This document shows, piece by piece, positions 33,767-64,000 of a stretch of DNA of 64,000 bases. The notes beneath the pieces are model-generated. The model saw only the letters and a list, made by a program, of their open reading frames with translations. It was not told the origin of the DNA and searched no databases. The first letter of the stretch is position 1; each line of letters starts with the position of its first letter. Location of the stretch: IMG/VR virus record IMGVR_UViG_3300027708_000012, positions 186,001-250,000 of that record, one strand, 5' to 3'. The position numbers were made by a program, and so were the translations under genes.

Positions 33767-34633
33767 TCAAAATAATATTTCCCTTGCCTCACTGGACGAT
33801 GCTACGTTACCACCCAATAGCTTTATAATATCTGCAGCCATTTTAACTAATTCGGCGTTAGTCTTTGCCAAAACACCTTTACTAGTATAGATATTATCTT
33901 CCATACCAACACGTACATGCCCGCCTAATATCATAGTTTGGGCTACCATTGGCATTTCTTGTTTACCTATACCAAATGCGCTCCATACACTTCCTTTTGG
34001 TAGTTCATTGTAAGCATACATCAGTGCATTAGGAGTTGCATTCCATCCATATTTGATACCCATAGCAAATTGCCAAAATGGAGTTCCTTTGATTGTTCCG
34101 TCTGCCACAAATTCCTGTGCTATACGAAAATCTCCGCTATCAAAAATTTCTAATTCACACTTTGTTCCTGCCTGCTGTACAAGATCTACCATCCTCCTAG
34201 TTATTAACTTATGATTAATACGTATACCATTTTCGGCTTGATGCATAGTATTAAAATCTATGCTGCACAAGTCAGGTTTAATTAATTCAATATGCTTAAC
34301 TCTGTCAATAGCATGAAGCAATACCGTCCCCGGTGCTCCGTGTGATAAGTTATCTTTGCTTGGAATATACAATGCTCCAGGACCTGTTGTTAAATTAATC
34401 AACACATTGGTATTATGTTTTTTAATTCTATCAACAGTATCTCGGTATAAATCTACATCCATACTAGGCCGAGTTGTTTCTGGATTACGTACATGGATAT
34501 GTACAATGGCTGCTCCCGCTTCTGCAGCCTCTAATGCACTTATAGCAATCTCTTCAGGTGTTACTGGCAGATAGGGAGTTTGTTCTCTATTAGTAACAGC
34601 ACCGGTGATGGCACAAGTGATAATAGTTTTCAT
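33767..34633 (-). CDS. Beta-keto acid cleavage enzyme (BKACE/Kce, DUF849 family)
   Basis: IITCAITGA, LPVTPEEIA, AGAAIVHIHVR, ELEIFD, GGHVRVGMEDN; start moved to 34633. Confidence 0.92.
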   Translation of the reverse strand: MKTIITCAITGAVTNREQTPYLPVTPEEIAISALEAAEAGAAIVHIHVRNPETTRPSMDVDLYRDTVDRIKKHNTNVLINLTTGPGALYIPSKDNLSHGAPGTVLLHAIDRVKHIELIKPDLCSIDFNTMHQAENGIRINHKLITRRMVDLVQQAGTKCELEIFDSGDFRIAQEFVADGTIKGTPFWQFAMGIKYGWNATPNALMYAYNELPKGSVWSAFGIGKQEMPMVAQTMILGGHVRVGMEDNIYTSKGVLAKTNAELVKMAADIIKLLGGNVASSSEAREILF

Positions 34634-35379
34634 ACAGTTCTTCCACCGTCCACTAAAAATATACTGCCTGTGGCAAATCGTATGTGTGTACAACACGCTT
34701 CAATAGTACTAGCAATATCATCTGCATACCCAATACGCTTTAACGGACTGGATTCTGCCATCTTTTCGTTAACACCTGGACCTTTAACAGCACCACTAGT
34801 TGGCTCTACCATAAAACCGGGAGACACCGCTACAATACGAATTTCAGGAGCAAGTGCTTTTGCCAAAGTTTTAGTCAGTTGATTGATTCCAGCTTTGCTA
34901 CAACCGTATGCTATATTGCTATTACTTGCACCTTCAGCACTGGTACTGGAAATATTAACTATTAATCCATCTTTGGTTTCTTTAAGCATAGGAGCAAATG
35001 CACGTATTGTAGCAAATACTCCACGCAGGTTAGTTGTTACAATACTATCAAATATTTCATCTGTGAGCGCATCCAAATTTGAAGGCAACACATTTTTTGT
35101 AATGCTTGCACTGTTAACTAAAATATCACAACGACCAAACTGTTTTTTGATCATTGCAGCCGCCAATGTCAAATCAGCTGAATTGGTAATATCTGCTAAA
35201 ATTGCTGTGCCAGATAGTGCTTGCATTTTTTGCATGGCACTATCTATATCTTTTCGAACCAGTGCTACTACTGTGGCTCCTTGCTGTGACAATCGTTGGG
35301 CGGTAGCATAACCCACTTGTCCGCATCCGCCTGTTATGACAGCAACTTGACCTTGGAGATTATTCAATCGTTGGAACAT
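34630..35379 (-). CDS. Short-chain dehydrogenase/reductase
   Basis: ITGGCGQVG, LVNSA, NISS, YGCSK. Confidence 0.92.
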   Translation of the reverse strand: MFQRLNNLQGQVAVITGGCGQVGYATAQRLSQQGATVVALVRKDIDSAMQKMQALSGTAILADITNSADLTLAAAMIKKQFGRCDILVNSASITKNVLPSNLDALTDEIFDSIVTTNLRGVFATIRAFAPMLKETKDGLIVNISSTSAEGASNSNIAYGCSKAGINQLTKTLAKALAPEIRIVAVSPGFMVEPTSGAVKGPGVNEKMAESSPLKRIGYADDIASTIEACCTHIRFATGSIFLVDGGRTV

Positions 35380-35409: not shown

Positions 35410-36741
35410 TCACAATGTATATATCCGCGCTTGTTCGATCAGTTTATTTTTATCAATCTTATTAACGCCAGTAAGAGGCATAGAATCTAAAATCCAAATT
35501 TTACGCGGACATTCATTGTAAGACAATGTTTTCAAAATATGTGTTTTGATTTCATCTTCTGTTGTATTATTTTTAATAGTTACAAATGCATAAGGTTTAA
35601 CACCTTTTATATCGTCCTCTAAAGGAATAACCGCCGACTCTACTATACAAGGGTGTGTTTCTAATATAGTTTCAATCTTCCTAGGATATATGTTATTGCC
35701 ACCGCTGACAAACATATCATCGGCACGTCCCACAAAATAATAAAAACCTGCGGCATCTGTTTCAAATATATCATTAGTGATAAAATATCCATCTTTTGTA
35801 AATCTAGTGTCCCCATTACTATAACTAGTCATCATAGACGGACTTTTGATTTCTAATATTCCATTGTCTAGTCTATAATCTATTCCTGTAGCCGGATACC
35901 CTACACTCATTTCAGGAGTGGGTAACCACGGATGTTTACTAAACAACCCAGGACCTGCTTCTGTACTACCATATGCTATTGATATGGATATACTAGGAAA
36001 TTTTTGTTTAATAAAACTATATAAAGTTTTGCTAACTGGAGCACTAGCCATGGCAATATGTCTAATGGTCGTAAGTTTAGAAACGTCTTCTTGTAATAAC
36101 AAAGCAATCATAGTAGGAACTGAAGTTATAAAATTGACCTTGTGTTGTTTAATAACTTCTACAGCAGATTTAGCTTCAAATTGACTCATTAGTATTATTG
36201 TAGCATTGCCAGCTAGTCCTACTTCTAGATTAGATAACCCATTCATGTGATAGCAAGGAGCTGCTATTAGCATACGTTTTTTAGGCATTAATGGATCCTT
36301 AGCTTTTTGACTTATAGTCCATAGACGTTTATGAGGTATTACTACGCCCTTTGGCATTTTTGTAGAGCCAGATGTGTAAAGTATAATAGCAGGAGAATTT
36401 TCATCCATGCTAATTTTATCTGGGGTACCTATTTTAAAAAAATTAAAAAAGTTGTCTTCTGTTAGTACGAGTTCACATTGACTATCTTTTATAATGTACT
36501 CACGAACTGTTTGAGGTAGTTTAGTGCTGATTAAAACTGCAGTTGCACCTGCCCGTAGTATACCTAAATAGGCCGCCACAAAATTAATAGAATTATTTGC
36601 TAGTATTCCAACACGTTTATACCCAGAAAGTCCTACAGTAAAGCCGTTGGCTAAGTTGTCGAGCTCAGTATAGCTATACTCTCTATCGGTTATTATTGCT
36701 GTTTTTTCTGACGGTTTAAAAAGATAACCTAAATTATACAT
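35410..36741 (-). CDS. Acyl-CoA synthetase / AMP-binding ligase
   Basis: LYTSGSTKMPKG, AYGSTE, FITND, GRADDMFVSGGNNIYP, GVNKIDK. Confidence 0.92.
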   Translation of the reverse strand: MYNLGYLFKPSEKTAIITDREYSYTELDNLANGFTVGLSGYKRVGILANNSINFVAAYLGILRAGATAVLISTKLPQTVREYIIKDSQCELVLTEDNFFNFFKIGTPDKISMDENSPAIILYTSGSTKMPKGVVIPHKRLWTISQKAKDPLMPKKRMLIAAPCYHMNGLSNLEVGLAGNATIILMSQFEAKSAVEVIKQHKVNFITSVPTMIALLLQEDVSKLTTIRHIAMASAPVSKTLYSFIKQKFPSISISIAYGSTEAGPGLFSKHPWLPTPEMSVGYPATGIDYRLDNGILEIKSPSMMTSYSNGDTRFTKDGYFITNDIFETDAAGFYYFVGRADDMFVSGGNNIYPRKIETILETHPCIVESAVIPLEDDIKGVKPYAFVTIKNNTTEDEIKTHILKTLSYNECPRKIWILDSMPLTGVNKIDKNKLIEQARIYTL

Positions 36742-38788: not shown

Positions 38789-39399
38789 ATTTTTTCTAAC
38801 ATTACATCACAATACATTTCGTTTTGTAATGCCATACCAGTTATCTTCCAACCCTCTTTTACACACAACCAATTTACTACTTCTACGGTCCCGTAATCTT
38901 CTTTATTTCTATGATCGTACATCATATAATCGTTATAAATTAGTTTTCCTCCGGGCGATAGCTTTGCTTGGGCAGCTTTGGTATCTTTCCAAATACCTTT
39001 TAATGAATGATCCCCGTCTATATAGATCAAATCATAAGTGCCTTTGTATTTGTGTAAATTAGTAGAACTATCTCCTTCAAATATCTGCAAATCTACGGTG
39101 TCACCAAATTTATTTTTTAGTCGATTGTAATAAAAATCACTGTGTGTTGACCCATTAAATTTTTCAATGGCAGGTATTCCATTAAATGAAACATTTGCAT
39201 TATGTAGTTTAAATATATCATATGCTCCGAATATTTTAGGTGTCAATGTTTCTATCATATATTCGGAAAAATCACCATAAGCAACACCTAACTCGGCAAT
39301 AGATTTTATGCCAGATCCTACTAGGTTATCAATAAGGTTACGCCTGTGAGCAAAAAGTTTAGCATCTTTCAAATGTTCTGGTTGTAATGGTAAGGGCAT
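38785..39399 (-). CDS. Class I SAM-dependent methyltransferase (Methyltransf_24-like)
   Basis: ELGVAYGDFS, DLIYIDGDHS, LSPGGKLIYNDY. Confidence 0.85.
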   Translation of the reverse strand: MPLPLQPEHLKDAKLFAHRRNLIDNLVGSGIKSIAELGVAYGDFSEYMIETLTPKIFGAYDIFKLHNANVSFNGIPAIEKFNGSTHSDFYYNRLKNKFGDTVDLQIFEGDSSTNLHKYKGTYDLIYIDGDHSLKGIWKDTKAAQAKLSPGGKLIYNDYMMYDHRNKEDYGTVEVVNWLCVKEGWKITGMALQNEMYCDVMLEKI

Positions 39400-39401
39400 G
39401 A

Positions 39402-40112
39402 TTATCTAATATAAGTGTCATCTTTTAATGATTGTATAAAACTTTTAAGCTCTACAGCGTTAGCTACTTTATCCCATAGCTGTTCAGTTTTTCTCTTTTT
39501 TAGTTGATCATTTATTTTCCCGCGATATATTGGACGTTGTATGTATTCAAATAGTTCTGCTACTATATTTTCATAGTGTATAGTAGTGTAAGTTATATCT
39601 AGCGATTTCAACCAATTATCAAAATTCTTATTTTGTTCGTATAACCAAGCCATTTCTTCAAAGTGATGTATTTCTAAATCATCGGGTAAGTCAGATGCTG
39701 TAAATTCGTGCCACACACCTGTGGATAATGCTAGTCCGTAACTTAGTATTTGAGCTTCTATATCTTGTCTTTTTAACACTACAAATTCTATATTACATTT
39801 TTCTATTCTTTTAATAATTTCTTTATGATTAGGGATATTACTGTAAGGAAAAAATCTTACCACAAGTGATTGATTTTTGTCACCATTCTCTAATGCTAAT
39901 AGCACATTTTCAACACGTTCTTCTATAGAAATTGAGCTAGTATCATCGTAATAGTTAAGAGTGTTATCATCGTTTATTTTTACTCTAGTTTCTAAATTAT
40001 GAGTAAATGGCTCGTATAGGTTTGCCATGTTACGAGTTGAACTTTCAAGCAGTGTGGCCAGTAATTGACTACCACTACGCGGTAACCCTAAAATGCAAAA
40101 TCTCTTTTTCAT
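39402..40112 (-). CDS. Sulfotransferase-like protein (Stf0/P-loop type)
   Basis: ILGLPRSGSQLL 5'-PSB loop, LYEPF, LKRQDIEAQILS, IHYE. Confidence 0.7.
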   Translation of the reverse strand: MKKRFCILGLPRSGSQLLATLLESSTRNMANLYEPFTHNLETRVKINDDNTLNYYDDTSSISIEERVENVLLALENGDKNQSLVVRFFPYSNIPNHKEIIKRIEKCNIEFVVLKRQDIEAQILSYGLALSTGVWHEFTASDLPDDLEIHHFEEMAWLYEQNKNFDNWLKSLDITYTTIHYENIVAELFEYIQRPIYRGKINDQLKKRKTEQLWDKVANAVELKSFIQSLKDDTYIR

Positions 40113-41059
40113 TACTTTTCCTTAGTACTCATAATATCAAAATTACAATGACACATATTTTTGCTACACACTATTGGCTCAGTTGGGAGAGTTAAATCTA
40201 CGTCGTTTATTTTACCAACAGCACCACCCTCTTTACACCATCCTCGATAAATTGAACCATCCATATCAACAATCAATTGCTCAATACCAGCATAGCATTT
40301 CCAGCCAGACCAGTCATTGATTTTTTCGCTAATGAACCTATGCGCACTTGATACTTGGCTAGTACCGTCAGGATATACTACACGCATAGCACCTCTGTAA
40401 TAATCAAATGTCTTGGTAAATTTAATATGTTTACTGATTAATTCGTGTTGCTTATCAAATATTCTCTTTTGAAAATCATTATAATCATAGAGTGTATCAC
40501 CAAAGTCGTGGATCAATGGCTGCAAGGCCATACTAATATTGCCTAAATTTTTAATTTTATTTGCTACAGCATAACAATGATCAAACTTTTCAGGACTCAT
40601 CATTATGTTAACGTGAGTGCGTACATCGTTGTTTAATAATTTAACTACGTCAATAAAGTGTTTATCGTCAGCATGCTCTGGATGAAAGCTAAGACATACA
40701 TGATCAAAGTATTGTTTATTTTCTTCCCAGTATCTTAGTGTGCGTGATCCATTACTGATTAAACCAACTTTGACACCCATCTCAGAACAAAATTGACAAA
40801 TTTCAATAAAATGTTTATACATTGTGACTTCACCACCAGTGAATTCAAAATATATTTTTTTATGAAAATATTGATCTTTTACACGAGCAATGAAATTTTT
40901 AATTACGCTAGGATCAGGCCAATACTTTGATCCATCGTGCAGTGCTGAAGGACAATACGAGCAACTATAGTTACAGGTATTGCCCAAGCACCAATTGACT
41001 ACAAACCAATCTTCGTGCGAATTGTTTGAATGTTCTAACCGTATATATTTGTGTTCCAT
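40112..41059 (-). CDS. Radical SAM protein with C-terminal SPASM/twitch-like domain
   Basis: CNYSCSYC, FTGGEVT, ISNGSR; C-terminal WKCYAG...C...C...CHC. Confidence 0.88.
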   Translation of the reverse strand: MEHKYIRLEHSNNSHEDWFVVNWCLGNTCNYSCSYCPSALHDGSKYWPDPSVIKNFIARVKDQYFHKKIYFEFTGGEVTMYKHFIEICQFCSEMGVKVGLISNGSRTLRYWEENKQYFDHVCLSFHPEHADDKHFIDVVKLLNNDVRTHVNIMMSPEKFDHCYAVANKIKNLGNISMALQPLIHDFGDTLYDYNDFQKRIFDKQHELISKHIKFTKTFDYYRGAMRVVYPDGTSQVSSAHRFISEKINDWSGWKCYAGIEQLIVDMDGSIYRGWCKEGGAVGKINDVDLTLPTEPIVCSKNMCHCNFDIMSTKEK

Positions 41060-41086
41060 GGAAAACCTTATAATATACTAGTTATC

Positions 41087-41926
41087 TCAAGTCCATAGTG
41101 CGTCTCTAATTTTAATAAGTCGAATCATCATATCGGTATCTTCTTTTTCATATGCCGCTTCAATCTTTTGAAGCAACTTATGCGCCTTGTCGCTAGCCTT
41201 TTTAACAGCAGGATCTTTTTCCTGCCCCCAATTTAGCTTGCCACCATTGGCAATACGACTTGCTTCACAGGCCGCAGTCCAACCACTGGCTTCGTATGGA
41301 TCGGGTCGGTTACGATAGGTCACAGTCCACCAATTGTAAAGTTCTTTGATTTCCTTGGCACGTAGTGCTTGACCAGTTGGTTTGCCATAGTCAGGATGTT
41401 CGGGCCCACACCAGTCGTTATTAGTTAGTGTCATGGCCCAGTCTAAGTGATCAAGGCCTGCTTGCGGACAACGCCATGTACGCCAGCGGAACCAACCTGT
41501 GGCCCAGAATGGTGCATTATATTTGGCTTTATCTTTTTCATCACCCCAGGCAATGTGACTCCATGCTTGTTCTACTTCAACAAAGTCAACAAGTTCATTA
41601 AACAAACATGGCAAGAATCGATTCCCAACATCGCACCAGTTGCCAGGACGAATATCGCGAACATGAGCAGTAAGACTATGAGTCCGAGTAACCCACCGAT
41701 TATTAATATAATACTTGATATCATAGAGTTTCCTTACAGGCCAAGTTACAAAATCTTGTAGATGGCCGAGCCCTTCTTCTGCTAGCCAGTAACGGAAATT
41801 GTGTTTCATTTGAGCTGTGGTTGTCCAGTCGTCCCATTCTTCGGCTGTTCCTGCACTCAATTTCTTAGTACCTCGGATCCAGTCTGCGAAAGGAGTACAA
41901 CTCCAGTAGTTAGTGTGATGTGCCAT
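41087..41926 (-). CDS. Trp-rich hypothetical phage protein
   Basis: Long ORF; likely start MAHHTNYW. Confidence 0.75.
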   Translation of the reverse strand: MAHHTNYWSCTPFADWIRGTKKLSAGTAEEWDDWTTTAQMKHNFRYWLAEEGLGHLQDFVTWPVRKLYDIKYYINNRWVTRTHSLTAHVRDIRPGNWCDVGNRFLPCLFNELVDFVEVEQAWSHIAWGDEKDKAKYNAPFWATGWFRWRTWRCPQAGLDHLDWAMTLTNNDWCGPEHPDYGKPTGQALRAKEIKELYNWWTVTYRNRPDPYEASGWTAACEASRIANGGKLNWGQEKDPAVKKASDKAHKLLQKIEAAYEKEDTDMMIRLIKIRDALWT

Positions 41927-41927
41927 T

Positions 41928-42674
41928 TTATTTTTTAAACCCAAACGGGCATTTACTTTCGTATTTGTTTATGAGATTCTTTGTCGTTCCGTACTTATTA
42001 AGAAACGACGTAGGAATTAAACGCTCTCTTTTGTTCATAAACTCTTCTTCGCTGAGTTTATGCACATGTACTTTTACACTCCTATCATCCATTGGTACAA
42101 TATTAACCATAGGAGTTCCTTCTTTAATCAAAAGATTTTCTCGAAGATTTTGAAAACTAAAAAACATGTTAATATCAGTTGTGGAATTATATTTGTAATT
42201 AACTACACCTGGGGGTATGATAAAATTTCCCGGATTTCTAAATCCCCATGTATTCTGAACCCACATCCAGTTGATATTTTCCTTGCATTCAATTAACCAC
42301 GGAGTTTGAATTTTTAAATGTGAATATTCATTCGGGTTTAAATAGCCTTCCATCTGTCTAAAGGCATGATGGCCAGCGGCTGATATACCATCAGCAAACT
42401 GTAAACCAAACTGGCGATTAACCGTCAATCCAATCGCCATCTCACTCCATAAAGGAATGGTAATTCCGTTGTTAAAAAACTGATTAAATCCTGTACAACC
42501 TTTAATAGTTGACTGTGGGAATATACCCGACTCATCTGGATAGCTTTTATCCAACACCTTCCACCAATCGGGGAAAAATTTGTTAGTATTATCAATCGGA
42601 TAAAAGTCGTGAACATACTGTCTGCCGGTAAAGCAGTCTACATTAATAGTATTAGACTTAAACCAAAACATCAT
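41928..42674 (-). CDS. Hypothetical protein (beta-rich)
   Basis: 248-aa ORF coupled to neighbours. Confidence 0.7.
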   Translation of the reverse strand: MMFWFKSNTINVDCFTGRQYVHDFYPIDNTNKFFPDWWKVLDKSYPDESGIFPQSTIKGCTGFNQFFNNGITIPLWSEMAIGLTVNRQFGLQFADGISAAGHHAFRQMEGYLNPNEYSHLKIQTPWLIECKENINWMWVQNTWGFRNPGNFIIPPGVVNYKYNSTTDINMFFSFQNLRENLLIKEGTPMVNIVPMDDRSVKVHVHKLSEEEFMNKRERLIPTSFLNKYGTTKNLINKYESKCPFGFKK

Positions 42675-56962: not shown

Positions 56963-57907
56963 TTATTTTGATTGAATCTTAGCTACTAAGCCAGCAGTAA
57001 AATAGTTCTCAAATTTCTCGTAAACTACTTTAGTTGCTTCTGCAAAGCGAACTTGCTCTTCTGTGCTCATACGAACAACTTCAATACCGTCAGCTTCTGC
57101 ACGAGCTTGTACAAGTGCGATGTCGTCGATACTTAGGCTACGCTCATAACGTGCGGCTTCTTTAGCGGCTTCGCTAACAACTGCCTGTAGTTCTGAACTT
57201 AGTGTGTTCCAGAAGTCAGTACCAATCAAAATGCTTGTTAAGAACAAGCTGTGTTCTGTGTGGTTGATAACTTTAGATACTTTGTCGTGTCCTAGTGCAT
57301 AAACACGAGGATATGTGCTTTCGCCAACTGTTACATTAGCTGAAGCCAAGTTCTCTGATAGTTCTTCCAATTCCATTGGAACTACATCAGCACCAAGGGT
57401 TTTGAATGTTTCGATAGCAACTGGGCTGAAACTTGTGCGCAACTTCATACCACGTAGGTCTTCAATCTTAGCTACTGCTTCATTACCAGGAATGATACGG
57501 AAACCGCCTGAGTATGTGAAAGCTAAACCTTTAACTTTCTTAGACTCTTGCAAGCTATCTAACAAACTAGCGCCGACTTCACCTTCGAATACGCGACTTG
57601 CGTGATCGTGGTCTTTAAACAAGAACGGTAGATCCAAAGCATAAAAGTCTTTGTTGATCTTACCTAGTGTAATTGTGTAAGTTTGACTCATTTCGATTGC
57701 GCCAGAATCTAGCAAATCTACTAAGCTGTGCTTGTCAACTACAACACCGTTATTGTACTTTTCAGCGTATTCGCTCATAGTCATAACTTCGATTTCAAGT
57801 TGTTCAGGTGCTCGTGCATTTACTTCTTGAGCAAATACTTTGGCGGCGCGAATAAACAACTCAATTGGCTCGTGTGCGAGTACCCATTTTATGTGTTTTT
57901 TGTTCAT
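56963..57907 (-). CDS. dctP: TRAP-type solute-binding protein (DctP family) without signal peptide
   Basis: ALDLPFLF, KIEDLRGMKLRT, FKTLGADVVPM, HTEHSL; N-terminus MNKKHIKWVLAHEP has no hydrophobic core. Confidence 0.85.
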   Translation of the reverse strand: MNKKHIKWVLAHEPIELFIRAAKVFAQEVNARAPEQLEIEVMTMSEYAEKYNNGVVVDKHSLVDLLDSGAIEMSQTYTITLGKINKDFYALDLPFLFKDHDHASRVFEGEVGASLLDSLQESKKVKGLAFTYSGGFRIIPGNEAVAKIEDLRGMKLRTSFSPVAIETFKTLGADVVPMELEELSENLASANVTVGESTYPRVYALGHDKVSKVINHTEHSLFLTSILIGTDFWNTLSSELQAVVSEAAKEAARYERSLSIDDIALVQARAEADGIEVVRMSTEEQVRFAEATKVVYEKFENYFTAGLVAKIQSK

Positions 57908-57933
57908 TTCAAATCTCCAATGGACTAATATAC

Positions 57934-58194
57934 TTATTTAGTTGTTTTGGATTTTTCTGAGTTATCTGCTACTTTTTTACCCCAATCCGCTACGTTCCAA
58001 GCACGTTCGTGAAAGAAATAAAGTATGCTGTTAACTACTAAGGCAAAGCTAACAACTCCTAGCCCTACCATCCAGCTACCGCTTGCTAACCATCCACCAA
58101 CAAAGTTTGTAATAGTTACTAGAATACGCCAAGTAATAACCTTAGCCAGTGAGCGCGGAATACGCTCTTGAAATTTAGTTTTTAAGTTTAACAT
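57934..58194 (-). CDS. DUF2061-like small membrane protein
   Basis: RSLAKVITWR ... LYFFHERAWN. Confidence 0.8.
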   Translation of the reverse strand: MLNLKTKFQERIPRSLAKVITWRILVTITNFVGGWLASGSWMVGLGVVSFALVVNSILYFFHERAWNVADWGKKVADNSEKSKTTK

Positions 58195-58202
58195 ATTTTT
58201 TT

Positions 58203-59450
58203 TTAATGTGGCCAGTCTATTTTATAGTTAACTATGTGATGTTTAAAGTATTCGTATACACCTGGATCGTCAACGCTTATCTTTTTATAGTCATTGATCA
58301 TACCTAAATTTGTAAGACCTTCTGGGGTTTTCTTACCGTTAATTGTTAAATTCCCTAAAGATTCAAGTTTAGTTTTGAAATAAAAATACCAATTGTTCTT
58401 ATCATAGTTACATATGTAATTCCTAGCTGTGTACTTATATGTTGCAATGGTATTGTGTATTTTTTCTCCGTTGTTATTATTGACCATACTCCATAACTGA
58501 TAATCGATTCCGTTAAACCAATTAATAGTAGAATCTATGCATTGTCGTACAGACACCACTGTATTAAAATATAATGCACCCCTCACCGAACAATTTAAAT
58601 ATTTTACATTAAAAATCAACCACCAAAAGAAATCGTGCAAGCTATGCACAGGAACCGATGATGTGTTTATATTATGCACATATTTTTGATATAATAATCT
58701 ACCGTGCTCCAGACCTTCGGGCGTTGTATTGTATGCAAAATGCCTAATAAGAAGATCTTTATAAGCACTGTAATGCACATCACCGGACGATATTTTATAT
58801 TTTAAAGGCCGTAAGTTTGCTTGTACTTCAGGACTAAGATGTCTAGTATATTCGTCATAGTTATTGTACATCTCTAATCCGATACTAGTTCCCATAATAC
58901 AATCGCCTTCGTCTGAAGTAATTGGCATGTAGCCCATGTTGATTATATCGTCGTACCAATAGTTCAATGAATCGAGTATTTTAAATTTACCGTGGATATA
59001 ATTTTCCCATATGTACGGGTTTTCAATTACGGCGTGCATACTCGAAGAAATAATCACCGATTTTAATTCTTCTTGATTTAAATTTTTAAGAAGAGAAACA
59101 AGAACAAGTGTGCTATCTATGCCGCCTGAATATAATAATGCAAATTTTTTCCCTTGTTGAATTAAGGCTTTAATTTCCAAAGCGCGACTATCTGTTACTT
59201 CCTCAAACGATTTATTAAAATTTGGATCGTAAGCAGGCATTGCAAAATCTGGAATGATTTCTTGCTTCCACGGAAGGCTCCACTCCCCTTCGTTGCGTGT
59301 AACAAATCGACTTAATGAAAATCTTTTTGCAATATCTAAATAAAATTTACCGCCGGGCCCAGATTCTTCTCTGATGCTGTTCCAAAAATCCCAAGGTGCA
59401 TATCTGTCACCTCGAATATTATGGAAATAAAGTGTGTCGTCTAAGTTCAT
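58203..59450 (-). CDS. PP-loop (asparagine-synthetase-like) ATP pyrophosphatase 1
   Basis: ALLYSGGIDSTLVL; ITSDEGDCIMG; no N-terminal Cys glutaminase domain. Confidence 0.7.
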   Translation of the reverse strand: MNLDDTLYFHNIRGDRYAPWDFWNSIREESGPGGKFYLDIAKRFSLSRFVTRNEGEWSLPWKQEIIPDFAMPAYDPNFNKSFEEVTDSRALEIKALIQQGKKFALLYSGGIDSTLVLVSLLKNLNQEELKSVIISSSMHAVIENPYIWENYIHGKFKILDSLNYWYDDIINMGYMPITSDEGDCIMGTSIGLEMYNNYDEYTRHLSPEVQANLRPLKYKISSGDVHYSAYKDLLIRHFAYNTTPEGLEHGRLLYQKYVHNINTSSVPVHSLHDFFWWLIFNVKYLNCSVRGALYFNTVVSVRQCIDSTINWFNGIDYQLWSMVNNNNGEKIHNTIATYKYTARNYICNYDKNNWYFYFKTKLESLGNLTINGKKTPEGLTNLGMINDYKKISVDDPGVYEYFKHHIVNYKIDWPH

Positions 59451-60202
59451 CGTTTTTTAATTAAAGGTATTAATATTTTTGCGGAGCTGTCAAACTCCCA
59501 CCATTTTTCTCCAAAGTCTGCATTTCCAGCATTGTGATGATGATTGTTATGCCAACCTTGCCCCCATACAAATAGACCAGTAAACCAATTATTAACTGAA
59601 TTGTCATCTGTGTTATGATTTCGGTATCCCGCTGATGGAATATGGCCTACTACATTGACTAAATTATCTTGATGATGACTTAACAAAATTGCTGGAATTA
59701 AAACCCCTAGAGTAAATTGCCAAGAAACAATTGCAGAAATTAAAATGGTACTCCAAAATATTTTATTATGATTTTCATGTAGGTAAACAAGATAGGGGTC
59801 TTTCATAATATCTCTTGCTGACATTAAATTTACCTTTGCCGGATTAATTTTACGTTGCCATGTTATAAATGCACTTAGTTTTCCGTGTATGGGACTGTGC
59901 ATATCTTGCTCTTTGTCTGCATACCTATGATGTATTCCTCGATGTAAAGCTACCCAGAACGGTAAACTTCCATCGGCACTCATCATACCTAAGTAAGCTA
60001 ACACTTTAGCAATAATAGGATATGTCTCAAAACTTTTATGAGCAAAGTATCTATGGTATCCAACAGCAACACCAAACCCGCCAATTAATGTCCACATGAA
60101 TAAAATGCCAATCAGATTCCACCAAGTATAGTTTATAAAAAACAACGAGGCTAGAAAAATAACGTGTAAGGGATAACTTACTTTATATAAATGTTTATTC
60201 AT
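59447..60202 (-). CDS. Membrane fatty-acid desaturase (delta-9-like)
   Basis: His boxes HRYFAH, HRGIHH, HNNHH; DNSVN, GQGWHNNHH. Confidence 0.92.
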   Translation of the reverse strand: MNKHLYKVSYPLHVIFLASLFFINYTWWNLIGILFMWTLIGGFGVAVGYHRYFAHKSFETYPIIAKVLAYLGMMSADGSLPFWVALHRGIHHRYADKEQDMHSPIHGKLSAFITWQRKINPAKVNLMSARDIMKDPYLVYLHENHNKIFWSTILISAIVSWQFTLGVLIPAILLSHHQDNLVNVVGHIPSAGYRNHNTDDNSVNNWFTGLFVWGQGWHNNHHHNAGNADFGEKWWEFDSSAKILIPLIKKR

Positions 60203-60728
60203 TTCGATAACACCATCTAACTACTTGATCAACCGGACTAATAGTATTTCCGACAAAACTGTTTATGAATGGATACGTTGTTTTTTTATTTTTTGGAATT
60301 TCATACATTGTAAAAACACTGTATCGTTGTAATTCAATAGAGTGTTGCCTAGTGTTAGCCGATTTAGTAAAACTAGAAGGTTGGACATATACAAAGTTGA
60401 AGAGTTCTTCTGATTCCCAATATTTAATAGCAGCATTATATAATTCTGCAATACCATTAGTAGCTGCATTGAACATTGGATTACCATGCTTGCAAACTAC
60501 CAGTATCATGTACCATGCTGGTACAGTGTGTAATTTTTTAGTTGCCATGAATGAAATTAGTTTTTTATTTTCAAAACAACCAAAAATTACAACATTAGGT
60601 CCTATGATACGGGTAACTTCTTCAATTGATAAACGAGTCCGTAATACTCTCCTGGCAAATTTTTTATGTTCTGCACATAGATGATATATTTCGGAATAAT
60701 CATCCGGTTCGCAAATTCTTATGTGCAT
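60195..60728 (-). CDS. Hypothetical protein, possible GNAT fold
   Basis: MHIRICEPDDY start and FGCFENKKLISF strand-turn pattern. Confidence 0.5.
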   Translation of the reverse strand: MHIRICEPDDYSEIYHLCAEHKKFARRVLRTRLSIEEVTRIIGPNVVIFGCFENKKLISFMATKKLHTVPAWYMILVVCKHGNPMFNAATNGIAELYNAAIKYWESEELFNFVYVQPSSFTKSANTRQHSIELQRYSVFTMYEIPKNKKTTYPFINSFVGNTISPVDQVVRWCYRNE

Positions 60729-61291
60729 TGGTCTATCCTTTTATTTAATTCGTCCCAGCTTATGCTAGGAATGAATGTTGCAGAAATAGTTAATCGAGGT
60801 TGTGTATTTTTTGAAACATCAAGTACGTGCGGGAATTCTGTACGAATAAAAGCAGACGACATTGATAATATTTCTTGATGTAAAGGCTCGGTTGTTACAG
60901 GATATACAAATGCTCCAGAATGATCGGAAAAATCTTGATTGTCAATATCTGGTCTTTCGTACCAGGAAATAATTCCAGGTTCTCCTCCAACATAAAATGC
61001 TAGTCTCCAAATTAACGGGCCGTCAATTGTATTACCGTCAATATGATTACTAGTTACAGTTCCGGGCCTTGCAGTAAATGCATTTACTTTAGCAACTTTC
61101 AACCCCAATTTGTCTGCCAATGTAGTTAAGTCTTTTCCAAATTTACTTCTAAGTATTTTTCTTAAATTTAAATAACCGTGGTACTCTAGTTGTTTTGTAA
61201 TATCGTGTTCATGCAACATCGAAATTACCATTTCGATATCTTCTTTCGAAGGTTTAAAATTATCAAATGTCCTTACAAATTTATCTCTCAT
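60719..61291 (-). CDS. Hypothetical cupin / 2OG-Fe(II)-like protein
   Basis: SNHIDG (HxD) ... FPHVL ... RLTISA. Confidence 0.55.
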   Translation of the reverse strand: MRDKFVRTFDNFKPSKEDIEMVISMLHEHDITKQLEYHGYLNLRKILRSKFGKDLTTLADKLGLKVAKVNAFTARPGTVTSNHIDGNTIDGPLIWRLAFYVGGEPGIISWYERPDIDNQDFSDHSGAFVYPVTTEPLHQEILSMSSAFIRTEFPHVLDVSKNTQPRLTISATFIPSISWDELNKRIDQCT

Positions 61292-61298
61292 ATTAATT

Positions 61299-62009
61299 TT
61301 ATAAAATAGTCCCGCGTTTAAAACTATGAGTTTCGCCCATTAATTCGTAGTAATAATCTGCGACCCACCATGTTGTTTCATATTGCTGTTCCCACATTTT
61401 ATTAATTTTAAATTTAGCTTCTTTTAAAGTTTGACTAAAATATAGAATTTTTTTAATTTCTTGTATAATTCCGTTAGGATAAAATGAACGATCTGTATAA
61501 GAGCTAAGACCGTCCACCCATTCTTTAGGAAAAAATTCCTGAGAAATTGTGTAAGTATCGTAAAAATTTACGGTAATACTACATAATTTCCCGGCATACA
61601 TTGCTTTATGCACATAGTCGGCATACTCTTTAAGTGATGACAGCATACTGTTACTACTTTGTGCTTTAAAATCTTCCGGAGTTCCTTGGTAACTAATTTG
61701 AAGAGGATTGTCTATAATTTTTAATATAGGAGTTTGCCCATGTATTAAATCAGAAATTGTTCCTCTCTTTTGACGAGTCTTGTCAAATATCATAAACTCT
61801 AGGCAATTCGTATTATCCATTTTTCCGATATTATTAGGTAATACATATACCACCGATGCTATTTTTGATGATAACACTTTAGCAGTTTCGAGTGTTACCC
61901 AAAAGTCTTCATTATCGACAATTAACCAACGATCGAAGGAATGACAATAAATTCCGTTCTTTCTTCGATTGGAATCTTTGTCGTAGTAGTATTGCAAAGA
62001 CTGACTCAT
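61299..62009 (-). CDS. Hypothetical protein
   Basis: Likely start MSQSLQYYY. Confidence 0.7.
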   Translation of the reverse strand: MSQSLQYYYDKDSNRRKNGIYCHSFDRWLIVDNEDFWVTLETAKVLSSKIASVVYVLPNNIGKMDNTNCLEFMIFDKTRQKRGTISDLIHGQTPILKIIDNPLQISYQGTPEDFKAQSSNSMLSSLKEYADYVHKAMYAGKLCSITVNFYDTYTISQEFFPKEWVDGLSSYTDRSFYPNGIIQEIKKILYFSQTLKEAKFKINKMWEQQYETTWWVADYYYELMGETHSFKRGTIL

Positions 62010-62096
62010 TTTTAGTATCCTGTGTTGGTGGCAAATATTTAGCACCATACGGTTGCGGCTGATAAATATTGTATATTATTAATAAGGATATTAAAT

Positions 62097-62420
62097 ATGA
62101 CCTATACTACTACGAGTACTTGTCTTAGACCCAGTTCTCAAGAGAAATTCTGGACTTTTGAATTACAAGACTCTATAGATAATATTCCGTACGAGTCCGG
62201 AGCCGATGCTTATATAAAAGCAAAATATATCGATACTAACAAACTTCTTTCTCTGGGTTTTAGTGGAGCAGCTTACCCTCATGGATTAGAAAAAATAGTT
62301 ACTAGAGAATGGGCGTCTGAAAATGATGCGATGGAGTTTTTTTCTGACGAGTTTTTAACGCCTTATTTTGTCAAAAGAGATTTTTATAATGAAACGCACG
62401 GACACGTTGTACGTGTATAA
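62097..62420 (+). CDS. Small hypothetical protein
   Basis: 107 aa; TAAATA at 62063-62068 and AAGGA RBS. Confidence 0.7.
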   Translation: MTYTTTSTCLRPSSQEKFWTFELQDSIDNIPYESGADAYIKAKYIDTNKLLSLGFSGAAYPHGLEKIVTREWASENDAMEFFSDEFLTPYFVKRDFYNETHGHVVRV

Positions 62421-62431
62421 TATTTAAAATT

Positions 62432-63295
62432 ATGTTTAAAAATATACCTAAAGTATTTGCACATGTATCGTCTGTAAAAGATAGCAATTTTGTATTACCT
62501 GAATATATTTTAAACTATAGTAATGATACGGCAAATTTGTTTCACAAATATTGTCCGCACAGGATGTATCCGTTAGGTTTGACAGGGGAGCATGTTAACA
62601 ACATAACTTGCAAATTTCATAATTTTAAATGGAATAAAGACGGAACGCCTATTAATAATCCAAAAAAATTGCATTGTGGCAGTGCAGAAATAGGTCGCTC
62701 CGGATTAGTATTTAAAAATTTTAAAGAACCAAATCATCAATGGGTGGATGATTTAGCCGACGAAAAAAACTTAGTATACAGTCATTCTTGTCGCGGCGAA
62801 AGCAAAGGTAGTTGGTTATGGTTAATGGATGCCGAAGCAGATTACCTGCATATATATGGTGGGCAAGTACACCCTCGACTATCTTCTATCATTGATCTAG
62901 AAGAATCAATAATGGATCAAGGAGAAGGATGGATTTATCAAGAGCACACTCCGGGCTGGTGGTCAGTATATATCTATCCGTATACTTTTATAGAACATAC
63001 AGATGGGTGTTTATCTGTAAACTATGTGGTACCGTCTAATTCAATTGATGAGTATGGGTTTGAGTGGATCACACAATTTTATTACGACCCGACAGTATCG
63101 ACTGATCTTAGAGAAGAATTTGAAACTCTAGAAACTGTATTCAGAGAAGATGTAGCTGTTGCTGAATTGCAGAAAGGAAATTATTTTCCTTTAATGAAAG
63201 CTATGAATCGCTACGAAGATCACTGTGTTCATTTTGGTCAGTGGTTTCGGAACCACCGATTGCCGCCATCAATCGAGATTCAGAAAGTAGAATAG
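62432..63295 (+). CDS. Rieske 2Fe-2S oxygenase-like protein
   Basis: CPHR ... CKFH Rieske motif; EADYLHIYGGQVH; FREDVAVAE. Confidence 0.85.
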   Translation: MFKNIPKVFAHVSSVKDSNFVLPEYILNYSNDTANLFHKYCPHRMYPLGLTGEHVNNITCKFHNFKWNKDGTPINNPKKLHCGSAEIGRSGLVFKNFKEPNHQWVDDLADEKNLVYSHSCRGESKGSWLWLMDAEADYLHIYGGQVHPRLSSIIDLEESIMDQGEGWIYQEHTPGWWSVYIYPYTFIEHTDGCLSVNYVVPSNSIDEYGFEWITQFYYDPTVSTDLREEFETLETVFREDVAVAELQKGNYFPLMKAMNRYEDHCVHFGQWFRNHRLPPSIEIQKVE

Positions 63296-64000
63296 TTTCT
63301 GTTCTAACTCTAGTAAGAATATTTTTCATACCAAATTCAAGCATGAATCGTGGTTTTGATAATGCACCCGGTTCAAGGTCTCCTTCAAATCCTACCATTT
63401 TTTGTCTTGTTTGAATAGAAGGCCACCATTCTTGATGTATCCGTGCCTTACTGCTGCTTATTGATAATTTTCCAGGAATCAAATCGTTTATTAAATTTTG
63501 AACTATTGGCAAACGTGTATGCGCTACAGTTAGCTCAGGTGAATATTCAAACCAATCTGGAATGGCCGGCCTTCCTATAGTTTTGTGGTAAACAGACCAG
63601 TGCCGTGGACCTTCTGCAAATTCAAAAACCCAAGGACGTTTATTTGTCATATCTCTACTAGTTCTACGCCAATACGGCTCCCCGCTACCCATAATTGGTA
63701 ACCCATCACAATATTCTGTCATTTTCATATGCGGTAACCAGCCAGTGCTATTACTATAGCATTTGGTCCAAATATCATATGCTTCTTGTTCAAAAAATTT
63801 CTGTAAATTAAAGTCAATAACTTTTGGAGTTATATTTAACTCCTCGCATATTTTAAATGCATATGCAAGCTCTTTCCAATTGTAGTCATTTTCATATTTA
63901 AAAATATAAACATTGATTGGTATTTTTAAATCATGGTGTATACGCAATATAATTTCACTATCGACTCCGCCGGAAAATAAAAGATCTAATTCACCGGTGA
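63201..64000 (-). CDS. PP-loop ATP pyrophosphatase 2 (partial, runs off the right edge)
   Basis: Frame stays open upstream of the track start: TGELDLLFSGGVDSEIILR; IMGSGEPY. Confidence 0.7.
   Translation of the reverse strand, partial: TGELDLLFSGGVDSEIILRIHHDLKIPINVYIFKYENDYNWKELAYAFKICEELNITPKVIDFNLQKFFEQEAYDIWTKCYSNSTGWLPHMKMTEYCDGLPIMGSGEPYWRRTSRDMTNKRPWVFEFAEGPRHWSVYHKTIGRPAIPDWFEYSPELTVAHTRLPIVQNLINDLIPGKLSISSSKARIHQEWWPSIQTRQKMVGFEGDLEPGALSKPRFMLEFGMKNILTRVRTETILLSESRLMAAIGGSETTDQNEHSDLRSDS

What the first reader, a model, noticed from the sequence alone, without database searches (positions are those of the whole stretch)
57934..64000. Unknown phage tailoring-enzyme cluster: two PP-loop ligases, desaturase, GNAT-like, cupin and Rieske oxygenase
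Seen: a tightly coupled minus-strand run (hypothetical, cupin-like HxD..H, GNAT-like, desaturase, PP-loop, DUF2061-like, then dctP), a divergent late-motif unit (small protein plus Rieske), and a second PP-loop enzyme at the edge. Established: these families perform amide or adenylate ligation, acyl desaturation, acylation and O2-dependent hydroxylation. Inference: a phage biosynthetic pathway I cannot assign to any named one, possibly making an acylated/oxidised small molecule or peptide, or modifying virion or host-envelope components. The 107-aa gene (62097-62420) is a candidate substrate or scaffold.
Basis: partly seen in the sequence, partly recalled or inferred. Interest (0 to 1): 0.8.

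Follow-up and report, generated by a model that had tools for sequence, protein, structure and literature searches.

The report
Jumbo-phage acyl-tailoring enzyme island
A 345-kb lake phage carries a real, conserved island of about 19 enzyme genes (amide-forming ligases, membrane fatty-acid desaturases, oxygenases, acyltransferases and a signal-less binding protein) that recurs in related phages and in predatory Bdellovibrio-type bacteria; its product is unknown but is most likely a modified fatty-acyl or lipid compound.

Summary
The gene calls are correct. The flagged stretch is the left half of a ~13-kb accessory island, window 56,963 to about 69,950 (past the window end), in a 345-kb freshwater jumbo phage.

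It has two recurring modules:
- **Module A:** an orphan-fold protein (F2), a stand-alone asparagine-synthetase-type PP-loop ligase (F1), a DctP-type binding protein without signal peptide, and DUF2061.
- **Module B:** GNAT-fold acyltransferases, three Δ9-type desaturases with intact His boxes, five HxD…H cupins, a compact Rieske oxygenase and a second PP-loop enzyme.

A BKACE/SDR/CoA-ligase trio flanks F2-F1 in relatives. Here it lies 20 kb away, at 33,767-36,741.

The same gene set is clustered in Bdellovibrionota genomes. Phage F1 proteins form one clade beside the cellular ones, and island genes are shuffled gene by gene between phage lineages. So this is a selected functional unit, not a chance neighbourhood. 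It is neither a named pathway nor a neutral block.

My best reading is ATP-dependent activation and amidation plus O2-dependent desaturation and hydroxylation of a carboxylate-bearing acyl substrate (confidence about 0.4). The idea that the 107-aa gene is a substrate is not supported.

The parts
56963..57907 (-). DctP-type (TRAP family 7) solute-binding-fold protein without a signal peptide, probably cytoplasmic. It keeps the Arg of the K-L/I-R-T carboxylate-binding strand.
   Evidence: PF03480 E 7e-51 and NF037995 137.7 bits against a cut-off of 50. The ORF cannot be extended upstream. The N-terminus starts only 5 residues before the mature-domain strand, and all six phage and three Bdellovibrionota orthologs likewise lack a hydrophobic leader. 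Aligned to 4p47, LKIRT corresponds to MKLRT.
57934..58194 (-). DUF2061 small membrane protein (86 aa), apparently two hydrophobic helices.
   Evidence: PF09834 E 2.5e-14. It is 90-92% identical in L010 and L016 and 74% in L018.
58203..59450 (-). F1: stand-alone asparagine-synthetase-type synthetase domain. It is a PP-loop ATP pyrophosphatase that would adenylate a carboxylate and form an amide. It has no glutaminase domain.
59447..60202 (-). Membrane di-iron fatty-acid desaturase of the Δ9 (SCD/DesC-like) type. It is paralog 1 of 3 in this genome.
   Evidence: PF00487 44.7 bits. NF049918 DesA family E 3e-20, below the equivalog cut-off. His boxes HRxxxH, HRxHH and HNNHH are intact in all paralogs.
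60195..60728 (-). F23: 177-aa GNAT-fold protein, a putative acyltransferase. A second paralog lies beyond the window.
   Evidence: No Pfam hit. The ESM Atlas structure search returns only GNAT families, TM 0.59-0.65. hhalign against the GNAT201 family is negative.
60719..61291 (-). F22: 190-aa cupin-type (HxD...H) putative Fe(II) oxygenase.
   Evidence: H82, D84 and H154 align with the triad of 29 other island cupins. The nearest Atlas neighbours are viral cupin-like clusters without a Pfam family, with Asp_Arg_Hydrox or 2OG-FeII_Oxy members in several of the nearest clusters.
61299..62009 (-). F2: 236-aa orphan-fold protein, the universal genomic partner of F1. The likely start is 62009, not 62048.
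62097..62420 (+). F21: 107-aa small protein of unknown function.
   Evidence: Found in only 4 locus types. It is conserved along its whole length at 22-34% identity. No Pfam or PHROG hit.
62432..63295 (+). Compact Rieske non-heme-iron oxygenase alpha-type protein (287 aa).
   Evidence: PF00355 E 4e-8. C41, H43, C60 and H63, plus D137, H140, H147 and D240, are invariant in 8 family members. The nearest PDB sequences are Rieske oxygenases, including SxtT and SxtDIOX, matching over the Rieske domain only.
63201..64000 (-). F6: second PP-loop ATP pyrophosphatase, cut by the window end. The full gene is L001:5135-6250, with a probable start about 48 codons later.
   Evidence: SGGVDS motif. PF06508 (QueC) E 1.4e-5 over the P-loop only. 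The family profile hits NH3-dependent NAD synthetase at 2e-5. It is homologous to F1 only over the 112-column nucleotide-binding core (hhalign probability 94%). It is adjacent to Rieske in 7 of 9 loci.
33767..34633 (-). BKACE (beta-keto acid cleavage enzyme), part of the detached arm of module A.
   Evidence: PF05853 310 bits. It is 92% identical to the BKACE that sits beside F2-F1 in L016 and 62-67% to the Bdellovibrionota copies. Closest PDB entries are 9zsc and 3c6c.
34630..35379 (-). Short-chain dehydrogenase/reductase, overlapping BKACE by 4 nt.
   Evidence: PF13561 and PF00106. The best match is the Bdellovibrionota cluster SDR at 62%, above phage L016 at 53%.
35410..36741 (-). AMP-binding acyl/aryl-CoA (or carrier-protein) ligase.
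   Evidence: PF00501 and PF13193. Closest solved relatives are MenE, 4-coumarate-CoA ligase, 4-chlorobenzoate-CoA ligase and FadD13. It is 77% identical to the L016 cluster copy.

Best explanation
The finding is part of a mobile accessory enzyme island, conserved in its modules though variable in size, in a freshwater jumbo phage. It has two modules that together act on a carboxylate-bearing, fatty-acyl-like substrate.

**Module A.** This module supplies and activates the acid:
- The SDR, BKACE and CoA ligase would turn a beta-hydroxy or beta-keto acid, or a free acid, into an acyl thioester.
- The signal-less DctP-like protein would hold a carboxylate ligand in the cytoplasm.
- F1, an asparagine-synthetase-type ligase working with its orphan-fold partner F2, would adenylate a carboxylate and convert it to an amide.

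**Module B.** This module tailors the chain:
- GNAT-fold proteins would transfer the acyl group to an amine.
- Three membrane Δ9-type desaturases would introduce double bonds.
- Five HxD...H cupins and one Rieske oxygenase would hydroxylate or oxidise.
- A second PP-loop enzyme would make a second amide-type bond.

**Likely outcome.** The result would be a remodelled membrane or envelope lipid, or a lipo-amide compound, made in the infected cell.

**Shown here.**
- The gene families, their intact catalytic motifs and the folds of F1 and F2.
- Conserved co-occurrence in phages and Bdellovibrionota.
- Absence of a signal peptide on the DctP-like protein.
- Mosaic exchange of island genes between phage lineages.

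**Inferred only.** The substrate class, the order of the steps and the nature of the product.
For: **Conserved synteny.**
- The close relative L010 keeps nearly the whole gene order.
- L013 and L016 carry F2-F1-SBP flanked by AMP ligase, SDR and BKACE. They also carry ACP, Asp_Arg_Hydrox, Rieske, GNAT, the second PP-loop gene, desaturases, an ATP-grasp enzyme and radical SAM enzymes.
- The island sits between the same backbone genes as the 5-gene minimal island of L018.

**Cellular counterpart.** Bdellovibrionota loci L042, L044, L045 and L064 cluster AMP ligase, SDR, BKACE, F2, F1, signal-less DctP, GNAT201, cupins and two desaturases.

**The window genome has the trio too.** Its BKACE/SDR/ligase genes lie at 33.7-36.7 kb.

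**Lipid or acyl direction.**
- There are three integral-membrane Δ9-type desaturases with intact His boxes.
- ACP and acyl-CoA-type ligases occur in sister islands.
- LpxO/OlsC-type Asp_Arg_Hydrox relatives are present.
- Phage Δ9 desaturases have been shown to be active in cyanophages (PMC5776448).

**Amide formation.** F1 is structurally an AsnB/TsnB9/beta-lactam-synthetase-type synthetase, and the DctP-like protein keeps its carboxylate-binding Arg.

**Signs of selection.**
- Catalytic residues are invariant across deep divergence.
- Genes are exchanged one by one between phage lineages.
- Fragments 100% identical to the window are present in lake metatranscriptome libraries.
Against: - No substrate or product is identified. 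Every chemical step is inferred from superfamily membership.
- Island content varies greatly, from 5 to about 25 genes. Module B occurs without module A nearby (L030-L033, L036), and module A occurs alone (L017, L018). The modules could therefore serve separate purposes.
- In this genome the BKACE arm is 20 kb away.
- No ACP was found in the window.
- No electron-donor protein for the desaturases or the Rieske protein was identified.
- The closest solved DctP relatives are uncharacterised in the table. From my own memory, several bind sugar acids rather than fatty acids.
- The RNA-library evidence is low depth, and DNA carry-over is not excluded.
Confidence: 0.42

Rival explanations
1. The island is a hypervariable 'parking lot' of independent auxiliary metabolic genes with no common product. 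On this view the desaturases adjust host membrane fluidity, as in cyanophages. The binding proteins and the BKACE/SDR/CoA-ligase trio scavenge and catabolise an organic acid. The cupins, GNATs and PP-loop enzymes each have separate targets.
For: - Gene content differs widely between relatives at the same genomic slot, and the modules occur separately.
- The BKACE arm lies 20 kb away in this genome.
- Genes are replaced one at a time between lineages.
- TctC-like island proteins carry Sec signal peptides, as expected for uptake proteins.
- Single desaturase AMGs are known in cyanophages.
Against: - The same combination (F2, F1, signal-less DctP, GNAT201, cupins, two desaturases and BKACE/SDR/ligase) is clustered in distantly related cellular genomes. 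Unrelated functions would not be expected to travel together in this way.
- Fixed pairs recur: F2-F1, GNAT201-desaturase and Rieske-F6.
- The DctP-like protein has no signal peptide, so it cannot serve periplasmic uptake.
Confidence: 0.3
2. The island is a macromolecule-modification system. The PP-loop enzymes, 2OG/Rieske oxygenases and GNATs would modify phage DNA, tRNA or proteins (virion or host). PP-loop enzymes such as QueC and TilS act in this way in other systems, and phages are known to hypermodify DNA.
For: - F6 gives weak QueC and NAD-synthetase P-loop hits.
- Distant F1 homologs (27% identity) sit between small terminase and SNase/TerL in T4-like contigs.
- 2OG oxygenases and GNATs often act on proteins or nucleic acids. 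This last point is general knowledge, not tested here.
Against: - F1's whole fold is AsnB/TsnB9/beta-lactam-synthetase-like, and its match to other PP-loop classes (NAD and GMP synthetases, LarE) is clearly weaker.
- Three integral-membrane fatty-acid desaturases, ACP, CoA ligases and BKACE have no place in nucleic-acid chemistry.
- A carboxylate-binding SBP fold is conserved in the core.
Confidence: 0.1
3. The island is a ribosomal peptide (RiPP or lasso-type) or other peptide natural-product cluster. The 107-aa gene would be the precursor or scaffold, and the AsnB-like enzyme the macrolactam cyclase.
For: - Lasso-peptide cyclases are AsnB homologs (general knowledge, not tested here).
- A small ORF lies divergently beside the enzyme run.
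Against: - The 107-aa family is present in only 4 locus types and absent from the minimal and most large islands.
- It is conserved over its full length with no leader/core pattern.
- No leader peptidase or RRE-type protein was found.
- F2, the real partner of F1, has an unmatched fold.
Confidence: 0.04

Closest known systems
Cyanophage-encoded Δ9 lipid desaturases (vFAD-I and vFAD-II; Roitman et al., PMC5776448)
   Same: Both are phage-borne DesC/SCD-type membrane desaturases with three His boxes. The published ones were shown to be active on C16 chains, with a proposed role in host membrane remodelling.
   Different: Here there are three diverged paralogs (about 30% identical to each other) in a non-cyano freshwater jumbo phage. 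They are always embedded with a GNAT, cupins, a Rieske protein and PP-loop enzymes, rather than occurring as a single AMG. Their substrate is untested.
Asparagine synthetase B superfamily synthetase domains (AsnB/ASNS, beta-lactam synthetase, carbapenam synthetase, TsnB9 hydroxyamidotransferase)
   Different: F1 has no N-terminal Ntn glutaminase domain and a different 90-residue N-terminus. It has no Pfam or NCBIfam membership and about 10% sequence identity to solved members. It has an obligate genomic partner (F2) with an unmatched fold.
TRAP-transporter DctP-family solute-binding proteins
   Same: The domain scores above the Pfam and NF037995 thresholds, and the Arg-bearing strand is conserved.
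   Different: It has no signal peptide in phage or Bdellovibrionota orthologs, and there is no DctQ/DctM nearby. It is therefore not a periplasmic transport receptor. It may be a cytoplasmic ligand carrier or presenter.
BKACE (DUF849) / dehydrogenase / CoA-ligase catabolic triads, such as lysine fermentation (Kce) and dehydrocarnitine cleavage
   Same: The BKACE is a strong family member (310 bits) and is translationally coupled to an SDR and next to a CoA ligase. The textbook reaction is beta-keto acid plus acetyl-CoA giving acyl-CoA plus acetoacetate (my own knowledge).
   Different: The substrate is unknown. Here the triad is linked to ligase, desaturase and oxygenase genes in a phage and in predatory bacteria, rather than to a catabolic operon with a transporter.
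Uncharacterised Bdellovibrionota gene cluster (L042, L044, L045, L064)
   Same: It has the same families in one cluster: AMP ligase, SDR, BKACE, F2, F1, signal-less DctP, GNAT201, cupins and two desaturases. Identities to the phage proteins are 40-67%.
   Different: It is cellular. L042 is flanked by Dlt-like ACP/ligase/MBOAT genes and a Cys/Met PLP enzyme. It lacks the Rieske protein, F6, F20/F5 and DUF2061 of the phage island. It is uncharacterised in the literature I could search.

Membership tests
PP-loop ATP pyrophosphatase, asparagine-synthetase-type synthetase domain (F1) | SGGxDS pyrophosphate-binding loop | tested here: met
   The SGGIDS motif is present, with S108 G109 G110 D112 S113 invariant in 45 sequences.
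PP-loop ATP pyrophosphatase, asparagine-synthetase-type synthetase domain (F1) | Overall fold of the AsnB C-terminal synthetase domain | tested here: met
Glutamine-dependent asparagine synthetase (AsnB proper) | N-terminal Ntn glutaminase domain with catalytic Cys | tested here: not met
   F1's PP-loop motif lies at residues 108-113 and the AsnB-family structural alignments begin at about residue 64, after a short unrelated N-terminus. The upstream partner F2 has no Ntn-like or any recognised fold.
Glutamine-dependent asparagine synthetase (AsnB proper) | Curated family model (Pfam Asn_synthase or NCBIfam) | tested here: not met
   There is no Pfam hit at E up to 1. The only NCBIfam hits are LarE, NadE and GuaA P-loop fragments far below their cut-offs.
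Δ9 (SCD/DesC-type) membrane fatty-acid desaturase | Three His boxes (HxxxxH, HxxHH, HxxHH) plus the Pfam FA_desaturase domain | tested here: met
   All three boxes are intact in the three paralogs and in relatives. PF00487 scores 44.7, 66.2 and 70.3 bits against a cut-off of 29.7.
Δ9 (SCD/DesC-type) membrane fatty-acid desaturase | Equivalog-level match, regiospecificity and lipid substrate | tested here: not met
   NF049918 (DesA family) scores 72.7 bits against a cut-off of 400. Regiospecificity is not testable in silico.
TRAP transporter solute-binding subunit (DctP) | Family-7 SBP domain | tested here: met
   PF03480 scores 173.6 bits and NF037995 137.7 bits against a cut-off of 50. TIGR00787 scores 141.9 bits, below its cut-off of 175.
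TRAP transporter solute-binding subunit (DctP) | Export signal peptide and partner DctQ/DctM membrane genes | tested here: not met
   There is no hydrophobic leader and no possible upstream extension. No DctQ/DctM-like genes occur in any island.
Rieske non-heme-iron oxygenase (alpha subunit) | CxH...CxxH [2Fe-2S] ligands plus a 2-His-1-carboxylate site | tested here: met
   C41, H43, C60 and H63, and D137, H140, H147 and D240, are invariant in 8 members. PF00355 scores 33.5 bits against a cut-off of 20.3.
Rieske non-heme-iron oxygenase (alpha subunit) | Dedicated reductase or ferredoxin partner | not tested
   None was recognised in the island. The rest of the 345-kb genome was not searched.
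2OG/Fe(II)-type cupin oxygenase (F22, F5 x2, c192, F20) | HxD...H facial triad, with a basic residue for the 2OG carboxylate | tested here: met
   F5 has H79, D81, H148 and R159 invariant. F20 has H108, D110 and H160 invariant, plus R119 and K170. In the merged set of 30 proteins H82 is invariant, with D84 and H154 at 90% or more.
2OG/Fe(II)-type cupin oxygenase (F22, F5 x2, c192, F20) | Curated family model | tested here: not met
   Only 2 of 30 members touch PF05118, with a best E of 0.0014.
GNAT acyltransferase | Pfam GNAT domain or GNAT fold | tested here: inconclusive
   The GNAT201 family meets PF00583 (24.1 bits against 20.7, in 9 of 14 members). The window's 177-aa F23 has no sequence match, only a fold match at TM 0.59-0.65 on a medium-quality ESM model.
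Lasso/RiPP cluster | Short precursor with leader and core, plus a leader protease or RRE next to an AsnB-like cyclase | tested here: not met
   The 107-aa gene is not co-conserved with F1 and is conserved along its full length. No protease or RRE families are present in the islands.
BKACE (beta-keto acid cleavage enzyme) | PF05853 TIM-barrel domain | tested here: met
   It scores 309.9 bits against a cut-off of 24.8, with E 1e-75 to PDB 9zsc.

The most novel reading that the evidence does not exclude
Two kinds of attackers of Gram-negative cells, a lineage of freshwater jumbo phages and predatory Bdellovibrionota, may share a dedicated and previously undescribed pathway that builds an amide-linked, desaturated and hydroxylated acyl compound (a novel lipid or lipo-amide) inside the cell. 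Its core would be a new two-protein amide synthetase: an AsnB-type ligase plus an orphan-fold partner. That synthetase would be fed by a cytoplasmic TRAP-type binding protein re-used as a substrate carrier rather than a transport receptor.
Probability: 0.2. Interest if true: 0.85.

Novelty: new variant of a known kind. Interest (0 to 1): 0.62.

Why it matters
Phage auxiliary genes are usually single enzymes borrowed from host core metabolism. This case is different: a multi-enzyme, modular tailoring cluster that is maintained, expanded in paralogs and traded gene by gene among jumbo phages, with a counterpart in predatory bacteria.

If it makes or remodels a lipid-like molecule, several things would follow:
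- Phage control of host membranes would extend well beyond the single Δ9 desaturases known from cyanophages.
- A function would be assigned to several large families that are now 'hypothetical': F1 (410 homologs found, none carrying a functional name), F2 (165 representative clusters, with a confidently predicted but unmatched fold) and many viral cupins.
- A non-transport role for a TRAP-type binding protein would be revealed.

It also gives concrete, cloneable gene sets for finding new amide-forming and oxygenase chemistry.

Tried and rejected
**Searches that led nowhere.**
- DNA and protein searches against 50,697 GenBank phage records found nothing for the island or F1. A tail-fibre-like ORF (window 30995-32467) gave only short partial hits. 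The phage has no close cultured relative.
- PHROGs gave only two 'unknown function' families, for DctP and the desaturase.
- The promoter and terminator scan showed no excess over shuffles, so the 'late motif' could not be assessed.
- Seven literature searches found no description of this cluster. These covered jumbo phage with desaturase, DctP with AMG, BKACE with TRAP, jumbo phage with asparagine synthetase, freshwater jumbo phage with desaturase, and Bdellovibrio with desaturase and asparagine synthetase. The cyanophage lipid desaturase search found only the known single-gene desaturases.

**Ideas tested and rejected.**
- F2 as the missing glutaminase (Ntn) domain of an AsnB-like enzyme. 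The confident model has an unrelated, unmatched fold.
- The 107-aa gene as precursor or scaffold.
- The DctP-like protein as a periplasmic uptake receptor. It has no signal peptide, whereas the TctC-like island proteins do have one.

**Profile comparisons.**
- F23 against GNAT201, and F5 against F20, by hhalign: no detectable similarity.

**A corrected assumption.**
- I first assumed a marine origin. The sequencing-run search shows freshwater and lake samples.

**Not attempted.**
- A search for an ACP, ferredoxin or reductase in the other 280 kb of the genome.
- A direction-of-transfer test with a rooted tree.

Full report
**Source and context.** The window is positions 186,001-250,000 of IMG/VR contig IMGVR_UViG_3300027708_000012, which is 345,369 bp long. 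Phage identity is supported by tail-fibre, baseplate, DNA-ligase and endonuclease PHROG matches in the window and by backbone genes shared with other large viral contigs. The nearly identical DNA occurs in freshwater and lake metagenomes, not marine ones. No GenBank phage record resembles the region.

**Checking the observation.** The family assignments hold up as follows:
- DctP and DUF2061 are clear Pfam members.
- The 251-aa protein is a membrane desaturase (PF00487). It has the HRxxxH, HRxHH and HNNHH boxes typical of Δ9 SCD/DesC-type enzymes.
- The Rieske protein has both the [2Fe-2S] ligands and an invariant D/H/H/D mononuclear-iron set.
- The 190-aa protein carries an HxD…H triad that aligns with 29 other island cupins.
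- The 177-aa 'GNAT-like' protein is supported at fold level only.
- The edge gene is a second, different PP-loop family (F6). It is homologous to F1 only over the nucleotide-binding core, and its profile hits NH3-dependent NAD synthetase.

**True extent of the island.** Reading past the window end (L001 and L020) adds more genes:
- the rest of F6;
- a second desaturase;
- three cupins: two F5 paralogs with invariant H79/D81/H148/R159 and a 192-aa relative;
- F20, another HxD…H protein;
- a third desaturase;
- a second F23 paralog;
- a 201-aa GNAT (PF00583);
- a 178-aa unknown protein.

After these come an Mtd_N-domain protein and the backbone block Metallophos/DSPc/AAA_33/DUF2828. The island therefore runs from 56,963 to about 69,950 in window-equivalent coordinates, with 19 genes. 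In contig L018 the same slot lies between the same backbone families. It holds only five genes: F2, F1, DctP, a TctC-like protein and DUF2061.

**Conserved architecture.** I clustered ORFs from 34 loci and counted neighbours. Two modules emerge.
- *Module A.* The 236-aa 'hypothetical' protein (F2; window 61,299-62,009) lies directly upstream of F1 in L011, L013, L016, L017, L018 and L042-L045. In L010 it lies directly upstream of an extra F1 copy. In the window and at L010's second F1 copy, a cupin-F23-desaturase cassette separates the two. The module is followed by a DctP-like and/or TctC-like binding protein and often DUF2061.
- *Its detached arm.* In L011, L013, L016 and the cellular loci, an AMP-ligase/SDR/BKACE trio flanks module A. 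The window genome has this trio at 33,767-36,741. Its BKACE is 92% identical to L016's.
- *Module B.* GNAT201 lies within three genes of a desaturase in 18 of 19 loci, usually next to two to four tandem desaturases. Rieske is adjacent to F6 in 7 of 9 loci. F6 is within three genes of a desaturase in 11 of 14 loci.
- *Larger islands.* These add ACP, Asp_Arg_Hydrox, 2OG-FeII_Oxy_3, ATP-grasp and radical SAM enzymes.

**Cellular counterpart.** A scan of 185,579 species genomes found F1 relatives in 80 loci. The closest (38-47% identity) are in Bdellovibrionota MAGs, an unclassified 504-kb contig and one Burkholderiales MAG. In L042, L044, L045 and L064 the same families are clustered: AMP ligase, SDR, BKACE, F2, F1, DctP, GNAT201, cupins and two desaturases. 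L042 is flanked by a Dlt-like ACP/ligase/MBOAT/DUF1574 set and a Cys/Met PLP enzyme, and L043 by HlyD and a trypsin/Sel1 protein. Both are bacterial contexts.

In an F1 tree the F2-associated orthologs form one clade (100/99). Inside it the eight phage proteins are monophyletic (100/99) next to the cellular ones. This fits a single old exchange, but I did not test the direction. More distant F1 homologs (23-29%) occur alone in Bacteroidota, Burkholderiales and CPR genomes. Homologs at 27% also occur in T4-like phage contigs, between the small terminase and SNase/TerL.

**Points that constrain mechanism.**
1. The DctP-like protein has no signal peptide and cannot be extended upstream. The same holds for all phage orthologs and three of the four Bdellovibrionota copies. 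The TctC-like island proteins, by contrast, have classical Sec leaders. The DctP-like protein keeps the Arg of the carboxylate-binding strand. It is therefore probably a cytoplasmic carboxylate binder, not a transport receptor.
2. F1 lacks a glutaminase domain. F2 does not supply one. Its model is very confident (pLDDT 94.5, 131-sequence alignment) but matches nothing in the PDB or AlphaFold DB clusters, and nothing but a viral hypothetical cluster in the ESM Atlas.
3. The AMP ligase is nearest to MenE, 4CL and FadD-type CoA ligases. The BKACE is a strong family member.
4. All catalytic motifs are intact across deep divergence.
5. Identities are mosaic:

| Compared with | Protein and identity |
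|---|---|
| L016 | DctP 90%, DUF2061 90%, BKACE 92%, F1 53%, F2 32% |
| L010 | F1 75%, F2 62%, desaturases 83-84%, DctP 48% |
| Bdellovibrionota | SDR 62% (its best match; phage L016 is 53%) |

Genes have been swapped individually while the set is kept.

6. Four lake metatranscriptome libraries contain short contigs 100% identical to the window over DUF2061/F1, the desaturase, F2, the 107-aa gene, Rieske and F6. Depth is low and DNA carry-over cannot be excluded.

**Interpretation.** The co-inheritance of these families in phages and bacteria shows a functional unit. The enzyme classes fall into three groups:
- *Carboxylate activation:* CoA ligase, BKACE and the two PP-loop amide-forming enzymes.
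- *Acyl transfer:* the GNATs, and ACP in sister islands.
- *O2-dependent chain tailoring:* three integral-membrane desaturases, five cupins including LpxO/OlsC-type relatives, and the Rieske protein.

These classes point most economically to a fatty-acyl-like, carboxylate-bearing substrate and an amide-containing, desaturated or hydroxylated product in or at the membrane. That is inference from superfamily chemistry.

The main rival is that the slot collects independent auxiliary genes. It is supported by the large variation in content and by modules occurring separately. It explains poorly the recurrence of the same combination in Bdellovibrionota and the signal-less binding protein. Nucleic-acid or protein modification and a RiPP reading are less likely, for the reasons given under the rivals. 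In particular, the 107-aa gene is not co-conserved and looks like an ordinary folded small protein.

**Comparison with known systems.** Single Δ9 desaturase AMGs are established in cyanomyophages (PMC5776448). AsnB-type enzymes, BKACE triads and TRAP binding proteins are each well known. What is new is the combination, which has these features:
- a modular, paralog-rich tailoring island;
- an AsnB-type ligase paired with an orphan-fold partner;
- a cytoplasmic DctP-type protein;
- the same set shared between jumbo phages and predatory bacteria.

I found no description of it in seven literature searches. The cyanophage desaturase search turned up only the known single-gene case.

**Verdict.** I class this as a new variant of a known kind, namely phage auxiliary or biosynthetic gene islands. 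Interest is moderate to high because it is directly testable by expression and lipidomics.

Noticed in passing
window 33767-36741 (-): A BKACE, SDR and AMP-binding CoA ligase operon. It is the same trio that flanks F2-F1 in sister phages and in Bdellovibrionota, but here it lies 20 kb from the island. Its BKACE is 92% identical to that of contig L016.
   Followed up: yes
window 36807-42674: A second accessory block sits next to the BKACE arm. It holds two radical SAM enzymes, a DUF6492 protein, a Methyltransf_24 methyltransferase, an Stf0-type sulfotransferase and two unknown proteins. It may belong to the same chemistry or to a separate glycan or sulfation function.
   Followed up: partly
window 15506-27535 (-): A single 4009-aa ORF lies in the structural region, next to tail-fibre and baseplate-like genes. 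It had no match among the related loci that were compared.
   Followed up: no
window 63201-63295; L010:4953-5029; L028:5948-5958: The Rieske and F6 genes overlap convergently at their 3' ends, by 95 nt here and 77 nt in L010. In L027, L028, L029 and L039 the same two genes are co-directional and overlap by about 11-17 nt. This implies an inversion of F6 in the window lineage while adjacency was kept.
   Followed up: partly
L010:11248-12132, L011:11278-12195, L013:11250-12149, L017:4413-5312 and 6103-7014, L018:12332-13249: TctC-like (tripartite tricarboxylate) binding proteins in sister islands carry clear Sec signal peptides. The DctP-like proteins of the same islands never do. The window island has no TctC-like gene.
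   Followed up: partly
L020:11134-12204 (-), about 6 kb past the window end: A 356-aa protein with an Mtd_N (major tropism determinant N-terminal) domain lies directly after the island. It may be a receptor-binding protein or a target of a diversity-generating system.
   Followed up: no
L003-L009 (for example L006:6784-7893): Distant F1 homologs (27% identity, 369 aa) sit in T4-like phage contigs between the small terminase and an SNase/large-terminase pair, with none of the other island genes.
   Followed up: partly
window 56963-62048 compared with L016, L010 and L045: Identities are mosaic. DctP, DUF2061 and BKACE are 90-92% identical to L016, but F1 and F2 only 53% and 32%. F1, F2 and the desaturases are 62-84% identical to L010, but DctP only 48%. 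The SDR is closest to a cellular Bdellovibrionota-like copy (62%). This indicates gene-by-gene exchange.
   Followed up: yes
window 62336: One contig from a lake RNA library carries a 1-nt T insertion in a T-run inside the 107-aa gene. It could be a strain variant or a homopolymer error.
   Followed up: no
window 57934-63900: Four lake metatranscriptome libraries hold short contigs 100% identical to several island genes. All near-identical DNA runs are freshwater or lake samples, so the phage is not marine.
   Followed up: partly
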